From Asterias rubens (Eukaryota), in NCBI RefSeq assembly GCF_902459465.1, contig NC_047079.1:6200001-6264000 (forward strand): 64,000 nucleotides of DNA. The letters run 5' to 3'. Of the stretch, positions 22,301-28,300 are shown piece by piece (within the stretch, counting starts at the first letter, position 1; each line of letters opens with the position of its first letter). Both the position numbers and the translations under genes were made by a program. The notes under the pieces are model-generated. The model did not search any database, was not told the origin of the DNA, and saw nothing but the letters and a program-made list of their open reading frames with translations.

Positions 22301-25300
22301 GCAGCTCTATGAAATTGGGCCCAGGTGTAATGTGTGTACACGTAAGAATTTGATACGAGGTCAAAGGTGAGTCTGGCAGGATCCCACCAGGTGCTTCAAG
22401 GCTGGTATCCGTCCTTATTCACGAGCCTCAAAGTTTCTGATTGTCCTACTTACTCTCCAGAGGGCGCTAGTTCACAAATCTCAAACCACACCAGTAGATC
22501 GTGCCGAGAGTGAAGGTGACTCGTACTTGGCGTGCTGACCAAACCCAGCTTGGGAGACGGAACTGTGCAAAAAATGGAAAAGAAAAGAAAAACCTGAATA
22601 AAGTCGTTGTAAAGGAGTTTCACTTGATCCAGTCACAGCAACCTCACCCTTGTCCCAGAGTCCCAGCGTTTAGAAGCCATTTTGTGTAAAAAAGAAACGA
22701 AAGAAAAACAAAACCTCAAACACATTGGTGAATACAAGATGCCAGACTAGTCTGCCTGTTTGGTTGTGCTGCATTTTGACCAAAATTGGCGTCCAGCAAA
22801 TACTGGTCCCTCCATGTCGCATTTCTCTTAGCTCTGCCTTGTCCCAGTCTTTGTGAAAGAGTAAAACGATCTTACCTGGTGTTGCAAGAGGAAGAGTGGA
22901 TGGGAAGTTTCGCTTCAATGGTCGCATTCTAAATATAAACCAGAAATTTTGATAAATTTACCAATCATTTCTCAGACATGTGTCCTCAGTTTCAACTTAA
23001 ACATTTTTCACCATTCTCTCTCAAACCTTGTCGTTTTTTTTTTTATCAAACCAAGCTTTTTGACATTCTAATCAGGAAAATTACAGTTGCACTCAACAAA
23101 ATATTTGTTTTGTTTCCATACTCAGGAAAAATTCAAGTGTCTTCAATTAGAACACGGAGAGATTGGTTTCCAGGGAGCTTTCTGCAGGATCAGGAAGACG
23201 TTAGCAGCTCTACCCCACCCCCTTACCTCAGCCCAGAGAGACCATTTCAAGTTTTACCTAAACAGTCTGAAATATCTACTCCGCGTTGGTAGAGAAACCT
23301 TCCGAATTCTGAAAAATCTACTCCGCTGTAGTAGAATATGCAGCAAGACAAGTTCTCAAAAGAACATAAATCTACCCAGCAAGTAGACATCGACCTTTTC
23401 GCAAATACCCATTGCGCAAGCCCTAACTGTTGATTGAGGTGCATGCTGGTCTAGCTAGTGATCAAATTTGATCGCTAGCTAGACCAGCATGCACCTCATT
23501 CCACGCCTATTGTGCATGTACCGAGTATTTGCGACAAGGTCTATGGTGTTACTACAAACCAAATATACATTGATACCTCAACATGCAATGTTTCAAAATC
23601 CCATTATTTTAAGTTGTACCTAGTTGTTTCTTGGCTTTGGTGATGTAGTGGGTGGGCCTGGTAATGACCGAACACCTCAAAGACAATGGGCGACGTCCGC
23701 ACATAATCAAGGAATGCTCTAGTCACAGTAACAGATATCTGTCATAAGAAATAAATCTCCATTATTAAATAATAATATTGTATTTATAAGGGGAGTCCAG
23801 CACTGGTAGCTGAACAATTTCAAAAACATAGCCTGGGACACTCATGGTTTTTACCTAGCCTTTACCATTCGAATACAGACACCAAAACTGTACACAAATT
23901 ACAGGCTACACAGACAAAGAAGCATCAACTTCCTAACAGTTATCTTAAAAAAATTACCTCCAGCTGTAAAAATGTTTTAAACCAATCTTTTAAAAATAAT
24001 TTTCAAATGTTTAATTTACTTGTTGTCTACCATGCGTGTTTAAGATCAGGACCCACACCAATTCATAATATTACATATCTCCTTTTATTTTTCCTAATTT
24101 GCCAAAAGTCATCACTGTATGAAAGAGTTTTTTATAAAGGAAAGTTTCAAACAAAACTAGCAAAAATAAGATATCTACAACTAATTGTCTAGGGGCAAAC
24201 AAACTAACAAACGATTCCAGATGAGGTGCTCACATTAAACACTACAAATGCGTGAGTGGGAAAGGACACAATAACTTTTTTTAAAATGTAAAAATAATAA
24301 AGAATGAAAGGAGAAAAATTAACAGAAATCATTAGGAATGGTTTTTGAAATAACAATAGAAAATGAAACTATGGTAAAAATTAAAATGTAAAAAACAAAA
24401 AAATGGAGAGTACTTTTTCTACAAATAAATCATAAACTCTAACTGATGGAACTACTGTTGACATACTAGTACTTCACGTAGAAGCGACGGGCACTGATTT
24501 ATATCTTTGAAACTTTGGGGTTTATCCTTTGCAACCATCTCTTGATGAAGGAGAAAAACATCAAAGAAAAGTGGTTGGTGTAAGCCCATCTCAAAAAAAA
24601 GACCCAAATCTAAAACACTAAAAATCTGAAGACAAAGAAAAAGAAGAAGCTACAACTGCCTGCCAACATGAAAGCACCAAGCCGTTTCCCCTCCAAACAA
24701 AAAAAACAAAAACAAAATGAAACTAAAAGTAACCGACTTACATTTTGCACAAAGTAAAAACCAAGGGGCATCCCGACCCCTTGCCCCTTGTTCTGAACGG
24801 GGGGTGTAACAAAGGCCTCGCGCCCGTGAAGCAGACTGTAAGAATCAAAAGGAACGAAAAGAACGCAACAGCGAAGAGCCGTGCAGGGCAACAACGCAAT
24901 CAAAAAATTAATATTTTTTACAAATATTTATGACGATGAGCACTGGTGAAGCAAAAGACAACATGAAGGGTGTTTGAAATGAAAGAAAAGGAATACACAC
25001 TGAAGTGGTGGAATTATTAGAGGGCGTGTCTGCTTGTCTGTTTAAATTAGGGTGTGGTCCAGGGAGGCAGAATATGTTTTTCAATTTGGTAAAAGAATTC
25101 CCAATTGGTAACAATTCTGGATTGGGAAAATCTCAAACTGGCAACAAATTTAGGTGTGGTTTAGAATTGGCCTATCATTTGCATTAAAAAAAAAAATTTC
25201 CAATTGGTAACAATCCTGGATTGGGAAACCCCAAACTGGCAAAAACTTTGGTGTGGTTCAGAATATCATTTGCAATTAAAAAAGTAAGATTCTGTTTGGT

Positions 25301-28300
25301 AAAAATCGCTGATTGGGAAACCTGAAATTGGCAAAAATCCCCAATTGGTAATCACCAAGCCCATGGCAACAGACAGGCACACGCACCCTGTTTTTTATAA
25401 CAGACAGACCACAGTTGGTTGCATTCTTAGTTGGGCCACAACACACTTACATTCTGGACATGGTAAAAGCCGAGGGGTGGGCCCTTGCCCGTATTCTTCA
25501 ACGGTTCCGTCGAGAAGGCTTCGTCGTGGCGGTGGTGGAAGCTAATCAAGGGGAGCAGAGTTATGCAACAACAGGGTACCAAGGAACTTTTGGTTTAGTA
25601 CGGACCCTTCTTCTTCTTCTTATTTTTCTAATTTTTCTCAAAATCAATCCAGGATAGGGAGTCCGATAACTACTCTCCCATGTCAAATTTATATTGGATT
25701 TCTGTCAGACTGTATTTCTTTGAAAGACATGGGTCATTCACTAAAAAGCACCATCGGACACTTTCGGAACAGGAAAAAAAAAAATCACAGATTTACAAAT
25801 AACCTACAGGGTTTACAGAAGGTTAGGGTTAGGGAAATATTATTCCATGAAATGCTTTACTTTTTGAGAAAACATTAAAACAATTATCAATTGATCTCGG
25901 TATCGAGAATTACGGATTTATTTTAAACACATGTCATGACACGGCGAAACATGCGGAAACAAGGGTGGGTTTTTCCGTTATTTTCTCCCGGCTCCGATGA
26001 CCAATTGAGCTTAAATTTTGTTATTTTATATATAAGTTGGGATACACGAAGTAAGGGCCTTTGGACAATACTGTTTTCCGAAAGTGTCCAATGGCTTTAA
26101 ATTATGTAGGTAGAAATATTTCCACCTCAATTATTAAATGTAAACAAACTTGCTGTTTTGGAGTGACCTGGAAGGTTTGGAGGTCATTTATGAAACGAAC
26201 TGTGAATTTTTAGTGAGACCACCTGCTTGTTTTCCAGTAGATAGCTATGTAAGTCCGCTGGTTGTCCTGGACTAATTTTTGACAAAGCCCCTAATAATGC
26301 TTAGCTTAAATTTCTGATGCTTTTACTGTTTGACAGTTCATCCCATTATTCATTGAAGAAACGGACAGTTAACAATTAAAACCTGACCTTAGTTTCAATA
26401 GCACATTATTGTGTTTACAAAAACGAACTCAATTATGCTTACCAAAAAAGGGTTACCATCTAAAAACCCATTTCACATGTAGCATTTGTGACTGGTATCC
26501 TGCTTATTGTTTCTATAGTTTAATTTTTTTCTTTTTAACACTAGCTGGCAGCAGACTTACCAGGTAAAATTCCATTGTTAAGGTAATTCTGAGTATGCTC
26601 ACATCTCCAAGAACAATGGATTTACCTGGTGAGTCTGCTGCCACCTAGAGCCCACAAAAGTCTCCCATTATCCCCTCTCGGAAATGGAGTTTCCGACTCC
26701 GAAGGGTGGACAACAATTCATAAAAAAATAATGAAATACGCGACTCACTTGAATTGGCAGAAAATGTCCGAGTACTCAGTTGATATCCCAGAAGCCTGCA
26801 GGACGGTGACACGGAAAGTGAACTTTGACCCCAGTTTTAGTAACTCGTTCTCAGGGGCGTCCACCGTTGAGATTGAGGTCATACTGTCAGTTGTGCTCAT
26901 GGCCTCCACGTCTTGCTTCTCAATAATGTCTAGATGAAGAGATATCAAGGAATTCATAAGACATATACTGATACTTCAAGAAGGCAATGAAGGCAATTGC
27001 CTCCCTGCCCCTTGGTAAGTGCCTACAATTTCCTCATAGGGTGCCCTTTACCATGGAGAAAATGCCTTGGTGCTCTCGCCCTTTCAAAAACGAAGCATAC
27101 AGGCCTGAAGAATATTGGATTATTTCACTCACCAAGATCAGAGTTTTCTCTTTGCCCCTCAACGATCCTCACTTCATCCTCAGAGACTGCTGATTGGCTA
27201 AGATTGGTGGGACTCCTCTTGAACTAAGACAACAACATTAACAACAACAACAACAATAAATAAGATATGGGTCAATCCATGTGAGATGAAATATTCCAAC
27301 ACTGATGTCAGTTCAACAGGAACTCCTATGCTCTGGCGTTTCATAGATTCTAATGCTGTTGACAGGCAAAATACTTTATGAATACCTTAACAAAAACGTT
27401 TACAGCTTTTATATGAAGTAATAAACCACAAGGGGAAATGAGCGGTTACATTTTCAATTAATTTTAGGTAGAACAAAAGATAGTGACAAATACGGAGACC
27501 GCCAAAATAGGGCTAGATAGCTCAGTTGGTAGAGCACCACCACCTCTCTGGAGGTCGCAAGTTCACGTCCTGCTCTAGTCAATTTGTCTTTATTAAATCC
27601 AAAGCTCTTATAATTTACCTTCCTTTGGAAATATTCATCGTCATTAAATGCTATCTTGGCGGTTCCCGATTGGCGTACACCAGACCCATAGTCTGGTGCC
27701 TCTTCATCTGGTGATACATGTTGTACAGCAATGCGTAGGTAACCCTGCACGTCTCCTTTCTCGTTAACGATGGCGACACGATGGACCAGGGGTACAGGGT
27801 ACAACAAGTTGCTCAGATAAACAAATGCTCTGTACAACAAATTTATATAAGAAAGTATTGTTTAAAGTTTTATGGTTATGGAATCAGGTGACTATCAAAA
27901 GAGACTAGTGTTAAGACGATAAAGAAGTAATAACATTGATAAATAGACTTGAATAGTGCCGACTGCTGTTATATAAGAAACTGTTCACTTTGCTAAGGCC
28001 TCAGGAAATTAATGAAATGCCTGATTGAAAAGGTAAGTTTTGAGATGTGAGCAAAAAGAAGCAATGCCAGTGTTTTAAGAGTCACTGACAAATTGTTTCC
28101 CCTAGTGTTTTTTTTTTGGGGGGGGGGGCTGCAACTGAGGAACTTCTATCCCTGTAGAAGGTAGAAGGAGCCACAAAGCAAAATTGATCCTTAGATCGCA
28201 AGAAGCAGTGATCTGTCGTTTAAGACCCTGACTTACCTCCCAACAAGTCTGAACCAAGGGAATCGATCGTAGAAGGGATCCTGGCAGGTCACTGCACTAT

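What the first reader, a model, noticed from the sequence alone, without database searches (positions are those of the whole stretch)
24742..25541. Tandemly duplicated, mutually exclusive exon pair in the KIF1/unc-104 stalk
Exon 21a is (N)[30 protein letters not shown] (91 nt, canonical KIF1A-like). Exon 21b is (N)[31 protein letters not shown] (94 nt). Both start in phase 2, end in AAT|gtaagt and have good acceptors, and 21b has several upstream TGC motifs. Including both gives a TAG in exon 22 and skipping both frameshifts, so only one can be used. Protein motifs are kept despite heavy nucleotide divergence, which suggests selection. I do not know of this MXE being described for KIF1A/B, but could not search.
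Basis: partly seen in the sequence, partly recalled or inferred. Interest (0 to 1): 0.85.

Follow-up and report, generated by a model that had tools for sequence, protein, structure and literature searches.

The report
Ancient either-or exon pair in KIF1A
A sea-star gene for the nerve-cell transport motor KIF1A holds two back-to-back versions of one small exon, of which each RNA uses exactly one; the pair is real and over half a billion years old, public gene models already list both forms, and its function is untested.

Summary

- **The exons.** The window is from an Asterias sea star, not a sea urchin. Its minus-strand KIF1A/unc-104 gene has two homologous exons between exon 20 and exon 22: 21a (25541-25451, 91 nt) and 21b (24835-24742, 94 nt). 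They share a phase and a donor (AAT|gtaagt). Using both, or neither, puts a stop codon in exon 22.
- **RNA use.** In one transcriptome, two short contigs have exactly the lengths expected for alternative arms between exons 20 and 22. Their depths are 5.6 (b) and 4.7 (a). In another sample, form a dominates by about 300 to at most 8.
- **Already annotated.** RefSeq isoforms of A. rubens, A. amurensis, Acanthaster, Patiria, Strongylocentrotus, Apostichopus, Anneissia and Antedon carry a or b, never both.
- **Age.** A hemichordate (Glandiceps) has an intact, unannotated second copy. Amphioxus and Capitella have one exon only. The duplication is therefore probably ambulacrarian.
- **Selection.** 21b is under purifying selection (pN/pS about 0.2 between Asterias and Patiria).
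- **What it changes.** The exon swaps a stalk segment that is almost invariant across Bilateria and has no known structure.
- **Novelty.** I found no paper describing it. It is a new member of a known kind.

The parts
7183..49187 (-). KIF1A/unc-104 (kinesin-3) gene, as far as it matches orthologues within the window
   Evidence: tblastn of Ptychodera and Asterias KIF1A proteins gives about 33 collinear exon hits. Pfam on the Asterias rubens protein finds Kinesin, Kinesin_assoc, FHA, KIF1B, DUF3694 and PH domains.
26749..26929 (-). Exon 20 (constitutive), ending ...DIFCQF plus AA of a split Asn codon
   Evidence: RNA contigs join 26749 to 25541 at depth 352 and 279.
25451..25541 (-). Exon 21a, 91 nt, the canonical version ([30 protein letters not shown])
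   Evidence: Joints 26749>25541 and 25451>23738 appear in runs X2 and X13, and a 148-nt arm contig in X1. Present in A. rubens isoforms X2, X7 and X8.
24836..25450 (-). 615-nt intron between 21a and 21b, holding a MITE-like insert with three ~95-nt repeats
   Evidence: families D1, D2, D4; inverted pair I7 at 25021-25042 / 25368-25389. Part of the insert is missing in relative L001.
24857..24897 (-). Intronic element upstream of 21b, nearly invariant between Asterias and Patiria
   Evidence: It is the only conserved intronic block in the 3.3 kb compared. Alignment. Not recognisable in crinoid, sea cucumber or hemichordate.
24742..24835 (-). Exon 21b, 94 nt, the alternative version ([31 protein letters not shown])
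   Evidence: A 151-nt RNA contig lies exactly on the exon, depth 5.57. Present in A. rubens isoforms X3-X6. Only synonymous changes against L001 and A. amurensis.
23620..23738 (-). Exon 22 (constitutive), [32 protein letters not shown]...; holds the stop codons met if both or neither of 21a/21b are used

Best explanation
Exons 21a and 21b are a mutually exclusive pair made by a tandem exon duplication in the KIF1A/unc-104 gene. The duplication is at least as old as the echinoderms and probably dates to the common ancestor of echinoderms and hemichordates.

Each mRNA takes one copy. Both exon lengths are 1 modulo 3, so using both or neither shifts the frame into a stop in exon 22. Such transcripts are presumably removed by nonsense-mediated decay. 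The choice between the copies is regulated, because the a:b ratio differs strongly between samples. In sea stars it is probably regulated through the conserved 41-nt intronic element just upstream of 21b.

The swap replaces about 30 residues of the stalk, between the KIF1B and DUF3694 domains. It keeps the scaffold residues (H..R.EAF.T.P..N.G.G..PLGFY.VQN). It changes the exposed, mostly charged and histidine positions.

The likely result is two motors that differ in partner binding or tail fold-back autoinhibition, not in motility as such.

**Shown:** exon anatomy, frame logic, RNA use of both forms, conservation and purifying selection.
**Inferred:** decay of wrong forms, the role of the intronic element, and the functional difference.
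For: - **Anatomy and frame logic:**
- **RNA, run X1:** the upstream contig (3908 nt, depth 13.5) stops at the end of exon 20. The downstream contig (4170 nt, depth 19.6) stops 3 letters past the start of exon 22, which is the AAT shared by both exons. Between them lie a 151-nt contig on exactly 24742-24835 (30+94+27 letters, depth 5.57) and a 148-nt contig on 21a (depth 4.72). These lengths are what a k=31 assembly bubble predicts (88 or 91 unique letters plus 60).
- **RNA, runs X2 and X13:** the a joints have depth 274-352. 21b appears only in one contig of depth 7.9, or not at all.
- **Annotated isoforms:** all sampled isoforms in 10 echinoderm species carry a or b, never both or neither.
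- **Gene structure in relatives:** the order 20-a-b-22, lengths of 1 modulo 3 and gtaagt donors hold in Patiria, A. amurensis, Antedon, Apostichopus and Glandiceps.
- **Outgroups:** a single exon in amphioxus and Capitella. Of 150 profile hits, 149 are a-type.
- **Selection:** for 21b, pN 0.092 against pS 0.422 between Asterias and Patiria; for 21a, 0 against 0.569.
- **Tree:** echinoderm b exons form a clade with support 99/94.
- **Intronic element:**
Against: - The two 21b joints (26749>24835 and 24742>23738) were not among the rows printed by the single read-laying run allowed. Splicing of 21b in this species rests on contig boundaries and lengths, plus RefSeq models.
- Tissue and stage of the runs are coded, so regulation is inferred from only two contrasting samples. 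These are labelled as different organisms.
- The AlphaFold models give pLDDT below 50 for the segment in both versions, so there is no structural support for a surface-swap reading.
- The predicted stem between the intronic element and the start of 21b is no more stable than shuffled sequence (z = 0.78) and shows no covariation.
- The hemichordate copy groups with echinoderm b only weakly (80/0). No transcript using it was seen.
Confidence: 0.9

Rival explanations
1. 21b is a decaying or unused duplicate (pseudo-exon) that gene predictors include by homology, and only 21a makes protein.
For: In runs X2 and X13, 21b is absent or seen only in a contig continuous with the a-b intron, at depth 7.9 against about 300 for the a joints. 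The 21b joints were not printed.
Against: - Frame and splice sites are intact in every echinoderm class examined.
- Only synonymous changes occur against two relatives, and pN/pS is about 0.2 against Patiria.
- In X1 a contig ends exactly at both exon borders, at a depth equal to the a arm.
- The upstream intron element is conserved.
- In Lytechinus variegatus all nine listed isoforms use b.
Confidence: 0.03
2. The pair is real and used, but the two versions are functionally equivalent. The duplicate would persist through neutral subfunctionalisation of expression (different tissues use different copies) with no difference in protein behaviour.
For: - The scaffold residues are kept in both.
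- Models of both versions are alike, and both are of low confidence in this segment.
- In crinoids and sea urchins it is the a copy that has drifted, as if either copy could serve.
Against: - The b signature (LLHG.EAFVT..V.N...PLGFYFVQ) has been held distinct from a for more than 500 million years in four classes.
- The single-copy exon is almost invariant across Bilateria. This argues that these residues matter and that b's consistent differences are selected.
Confidence: 0.2
3. Exon choice is set by competing long-range RNA pairing (a docking site and selector sequences, as in insect Dscam1 or 14-3-3 zeta) and not by protein factors on the upstream element.
For: - A 30-nt purine-rich arm upstream of 21a (25607-25636) is 80% complementary to a pyrimidine-rich arm downstream of 21b (24620-24649).
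- RNAalifold pairs the conserved element with the first bases of 21b.
Against: - The arms are low-complexity, and no compensatory change was seen.
- Only one intronic block is conserved between Asterias and Patiria, whereas a docking/selector system needs at least two.
- The local fold is no better than shuffles.
Confidence: 0.1

Closest known systems
Mutually exclusive exon pairs born by tandem exon duplication (for example SNAP25 exon 5a/5b, CACNA1C exon 8/8a, tropomyosin, Drosophila Mhc); named from my own knowledge, not tested here
   Same: Adjacent homologous exons of nearly equal length and the same phase. One is used per transcript. The scaffold is kept and the surface varies. The pair is deeply conserved, with conserved intron sequence beside the regulated copy.
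   Different: This pair sits in the kinesin-3 stalk and is confined to Ambulacraria. Exclusivity can be explained by frame alone (lengths of 1 modulo 3). No steric, U12 or docking-site mechanism is evident.
Known alternative splicing of KIF1A/unc-104: the touch-neuron microexon in the C. elegans unc-104 motor domain (PMC12084633) and an alternative exon inside DUF3694 of cichlid KIF1A (PMC13646608)
   Same: Same gene family, with regulated splicing that changes the protein without causing decay.
   Different: Neither paper's passages on this gene describe an either/or pair of duplicated exons, and both events lie elsewhere in the protein: the worm one is a microexon in the motor domain, the fish one an exon whose inclusion level varies, inside DUF3694. 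The segment swapped here lies between the KIF1B (797-848) and DUF3694 (1133-1280) domains.
RefSeq predicted KIF1A isoforms of echinoderms (for example A. rubens X2/X7/X8 with a and X3-X6 with b)
   Same: They are the same two exons. The peptides are identical to the window's translations.
   Different: They are automatic models only. No paper, name, expression pattern or function was found. The hemichordate copy is not in the Glandiceps model, nor in the 15 Ptychodera isoforms seen.
Other mutually exclusive pairs noted by this scan in the same genome (katanin p60 pore loop, GALNT7-like flexible loop)
   Same: Ancient tandem exon pairs in a sea star that swap a functional loop.
   Different: Different genes. 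I did not check those notes.

Membership tests
Mutually exclusive exons from tandem exon duplication | Two adjacent exons that are homologous to each other | tested here: met
   18 invariant columns out of 30-31 residues. DNA alignable with the same donor.
Mutually exclusive exons from tandem exon duplication | Same phase, with each exon flanked by usable splice sites | tested here: met
   Both start with the third base of an Asn codon. Both have a pyrimidine tract plus AG and AAT|gtaagt.
Mutually exclusive exons from tandem exon duplication | Transcripts contain exactly one of the two | tested here: met
   RNA contigs for each arm, with flank lengths matching exons 20 and 22. All sampled RefSeq isoforms in 10 species have a or b only. 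The 21b junction rows themselves were not displayed.
Mutually exclusive exons from tandem exon duplication | Both copies kept by selection in relatives | tested here: met
   Four echinoderm classes and one hemichordate keep both copies. pN/pS for b is about 0.2 and for a is 0.
Frame-enforced exclusivity (with nonsense-mediated decay) | Double inclusion and double skipping both give premature stops | tested here: met
   Stops fall in exon 22 in both cases. The same holds in Glandiceps. All lengths are 1 modulo 3. Decay itself was not tested.
Steric or spliceosome-incompatibility exclusivity | Intron between the pair too short to splice, or one U2-type and one U12-type site | tested here: not met
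   The intron is 615 nt. Both exons have GT-AG sites with a gtaagt donor.
Docking-site/selector RNA competition (Dscam1 type) | Conserved complementary intronic elements with compensatory changes | tested here: inconclusive
   One conserved block only. Candidate pairings have no covariation and z = 0.78.
Kinesin-3 KIF1A/unc-104 | Motor, FHA, KIF1B, DUF3694 and C-terminal PH domains in this order | tested here: met
   Pfam on A. rubens KIF1A, whose exons match the window at up to 100%.

The most novel reading that the evidence does not exclude
The near-invariant 30-residue stalk segment of KIF1A is a partner-binding or autoinhibitory switch. Ambulacrarians would then have run two versions of it for over 500 million years, giving one gene two motors with different cargo or activation rules. 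The segment lies in the region that in rat KIF1A (657-1105) binds liprin-alpha and TANC2 and folds onto the C-terminal tail (PMC6077247). That equivalence rests on similar protein lengths and was not aligned here. The natural a/b contrast would show which residues of this unstudied segment matter in all animals, including in human KIF1A disease.
Probability: 0.3. Interest if true: 0.6.

Novelty: new member of a known kind. Interest (0 to 1): 0.42.

Why it matters
KIF1A carries synaptic-vesicle precursors and dense-core vesicles, and its mutations cause human neurological disease. How its long stalk selects cargo and keeps the motor switched off is only partly known.

The segment swapped here is among the most conserved parts of the stalk across animals. 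It has no solved structure, no confident model and no assigned function.

This pair is a natural experiment. It keeps the scaffold and changes the charged and histidine positions, and it has been held for half a billion years in echinoderms. That marks the segment as functional and gives two ready-made variants to compare.

It also dates one tandem exon duplication to the ambulacrarian stem. It shows that automatic isoform models already hold such cases without anyone having described them.

Tried and rejected
- **ORF search for 21b.** A protein search with the 97-aa open frame around 21b found no candidate. The one relative, P0001, is 208 aa and fell outside the length filter.
- **Mixed alignment query.** Aligning the window's exon translations to a full-length orthologue, to use as a search query, misaligned the fragments and was dropped.
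- **Gene loci that could not be fetched.** Ptychodera isoform X4 and Branchiostoma isoform X4 were not on record. The Ptychodera (630 kb) and S. purpuratus (121 kb) genes were too long to fetch. A second hemichordate and a sea-urchin locus therefore could not be read.
- **My first assumption about the domain.** I assumed the exon lies inside DUF3694. Pfam places that domain at 1133-1280, while the exon encodes 1009-1039.
- **Structure.** Prediction of both variants gave pLDDT below 50 for the segment. The fold search returned only generic beta-sandwich matches, with no aligned ranges printed; they probably hit the confidently modelled DUF3694 part. No PDB chain shares the sequence.
- **RNA structure around 21b.** No support.
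- **Literature.** Five searches found no description of the pair.
- **Sea-urchin origin.** Rejected: about 70% identity, against up to 100% for Asterias.
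Full report
**What is in the sequence**

On the minus strand, exon 20 ends at 26749 (...DIFCQF plus two bases of an Asn codon). Two similar exons follow.
- Exon 21a is 25541-25451 (91 nt).
- Exon 21b is 24835-24742 (94 nt).
- Exon 22 is 23738-23620.

Both 21a and 21b follow a pyrimidine tract and AG, and both end in AAT|gtaagt. Their peptides share 18 invariant columns. Spliced in silico, 20+a+22 and 20+b+22 stay open. Using both meets a TAG in exon 22, and using neither meets a stop five codons into exon 22.

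**What gene and what animal**

Orthologue proteins lay about 33 collinear exon hits on the minus strand from 49187 to 7183. The best match is Asterias KIF1A, with many exons 100% identical. Sea urchins reach about 70%. The DNA is 94% identical to A. amurensis, so the window is another Asterias, most likely A. rubens.

Pfam finds the kinesin-3 set of domains. The exon encodes residues 1009-1039, between the KIF1B domain (797-848) and DUF3694 (1133-1280).

**Is 21b used?**

Only one read-laying run was allowed.

In run X1, which carries the same species label as the best holders of this DNA:
- A 3908-nt contig ends at the end of exon 20.
- A 4170-nt contig ends three letters beyond the start of exon 22. 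Those three letters are the AAT that both exons share.
- Between them are two short contigs. One is 151 nt and lies exactly on 24742-24835, with 30 and 27 extra letters and no mismatch (depth 5.57). The other is 148 nt and lies on 21a (depth 4.72).
- A k=31 assembly graph predicts exactly these lengths for two alternative arms between the same flanks: 91 or 88 unique letters plus 60.

X1 holds all sampled words of 21b but only 11% of the 3.35-kb stretch, as a transcriptome would.

In runs X2 and X13 (one sample, another species label):
- The a joints 26749>25541 and 25451>23738 have depths 274-352.
- 21b is absent (X13), or present only in a 750-nt contig continuous with the a-b intron at depth 7.9 (X2).

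Both forms therefore exist, and the ratio differs strongly between samples. The two b joints were not among the printed rows, which is the main gap in the direct evidence.

**Public gene models**

I fetched the members of the echinoderm KIF1A clusters and read the residues after FCQF. Every sampled isoform has one version and none has both or neither.

| Species | a isoforms | b isoforms |
|---|---|---|
| A. rubens | 3 | 4 |
| A. amurensis | 3 | 5 |
| Acanthaster | 1 | 7 |
| Patiria | 5 | 8 |
| S. purpuratus | 2 | 4 |
| Lytechinus variegatus | 0 | 9 |
| Apostichopus | 7 | 2 |
| Anneissia | 4 | 3 |
| Antedon | 5 | 4 |

The pair is therefore already annotated automatically. Five literature searches found no description of it.

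**How old is it?**
- The genomic order 20-a-b-22, gtaagt donors and lengths of 1 modulo 3 (88, 91, 94 or 97 nt) hold in Patiria, A. amurensis, Antedon and Apostichopus.
- The enteropneust Glandiceps has an intact second copy about 900 nt downstream of the first. It is 88 nt with good splice sites and encodes [29 protein letters not shown]. It is not in the gene model.
- That copy shares a glycine and a one-residue deletion (LHGHEAF) with crinoid and sea-cucumber b.
- In a tree of the peptides, echinoderm b exons form a clade (99/94). The hemichordate copy joins them only weakly (80/0).
- Amphioxus and Capitella have a single exon with short introns.
- A profile of a+b against 1.8 billion proteins gave 149 a-type hits out of 150. 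The one b-type hit was a genomic fragment of another sea star.
- The single-copy exon is almost invariant across Bilateria.

**Selection**
- Against the related sea star L001, where introns are about 79% identical, 21a has five changes and 21b has three. All are synonymous.
- Between Asterias and Patiria, 21a has pN 0 and pS 0.57. 21b has pN 0.092 and pS 0.42.
- In sea urchins and crinoids it is the a copy that has diverged most.

**Regulation**

Between Asterias and Patiria, the only conserved intronic block in this region is about 60 nt just upstream of 21b (24836-24897). Within it, a 41-nt stretch (24857-24897) is nearly invariant, more so than the synonymous sites of the exon. It is not recognisable in other classes.

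It is rich in TGC and pyrimidine motifs, so a protein-binding silencer or enhancer is the simplest reading. A stem with the start of 21b is predicted, but it has no statistical or covariation support. A low-complexity complementary pair flanks both exons, and its role is unproven.

The 615-nt intron and the GT-AG sites exclude steric and U12 mechanisms. Frame alone explains the exclusivity.

**What it changes**

AlphaFold models of residues 860-1300 place the segment between a helix and a strand that precede the DUF3694 beta-sandwich. Confidence is below 50 in both versions. No solved chain shares the sequence.

Version b keeps H, R, EAF, T, P, N, G, G, PLGFY and VQN. It loses three of four histidines, two of three acidic residues and one of three basic residues.

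In rat KIF1A the 657-1105 region binds liprin-alpha and TANC2 and folds back on the C-terminal tail (PMC6077247). That the segment lies in the equivalent region is inferred from similar protein lengths. I did not align it.

**Verdict**

This is a real, used, ancient mutually exclusive exon pair. It is a known kind of device in a new place, and it is already present in automatic annotation. Its function is unknown.

Noticed in passing
L002:71438-71525 (Glandiceps talaboti, GCA_964340395.1): An intact second copy of the exon in a hemichordate. It is 88 nt with a good acceptor and a gtaagt donor, and it is not part of the annotated product. All 15 Ptychodera isoforms seen use the first copy only.
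   Followed up: partly
window 25021-25389: A MITE-like insert in the a-b intron: 22-nt inverted ends around three ~95-nt direct repeats. It is partly absent in the related sea star L001.
   Followed up: partly
window 25751-26127, 26376-26747, 23400-23647, 26996-27100: Intron stretches with RNA-contig depths of thousands to more than 200,000, and many 'opposite strands' joints at 25774/26078. These are flanked by 19-nt inverted arms (25751-25769 / 26076-26094). They look like high-copy transposable elements that are abundant in transcriptomes.
   Followed up: no
window 24620-24649 and 25607-25636: A purine-rich arm upstream of 21a is 80% complementary over 30 nt to a pyrimidine-rich arm downstream of 21b. 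Pairing would loop out both exons. The sequence is low-complexity and may be chance.
   Followed up: partly
P0281, P0282 (crinoids); P0278, P0279 (S. purpuratus): In crinoids and sea urchins the upstream 'canonical' copy has diverged strongly (for example FLHHKDGCFSTDPCKNRRTGSSHILAFYHNQY and [30 protein letters not shown]). The b copy stays recognisable, which is the reverse of the sea-star pattern.
   Followed up: partly
L007:32722-32752 versus window 24836-24860: The last ~20 nt before exon b read ttttgattctt..cag in both a feather star and Asterias. This may be a shared branch-point and pyrimidine-tract motif, or chance.
   Followed up: no
window 12342-12386, 12779-12796, 14721-14932, 43765-43845: The scan's notes list four other candidate alternative exons in this same gene: two cassettes, a microexon, and a K-loop microexon. 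I did not examine them.
   Followed up: no
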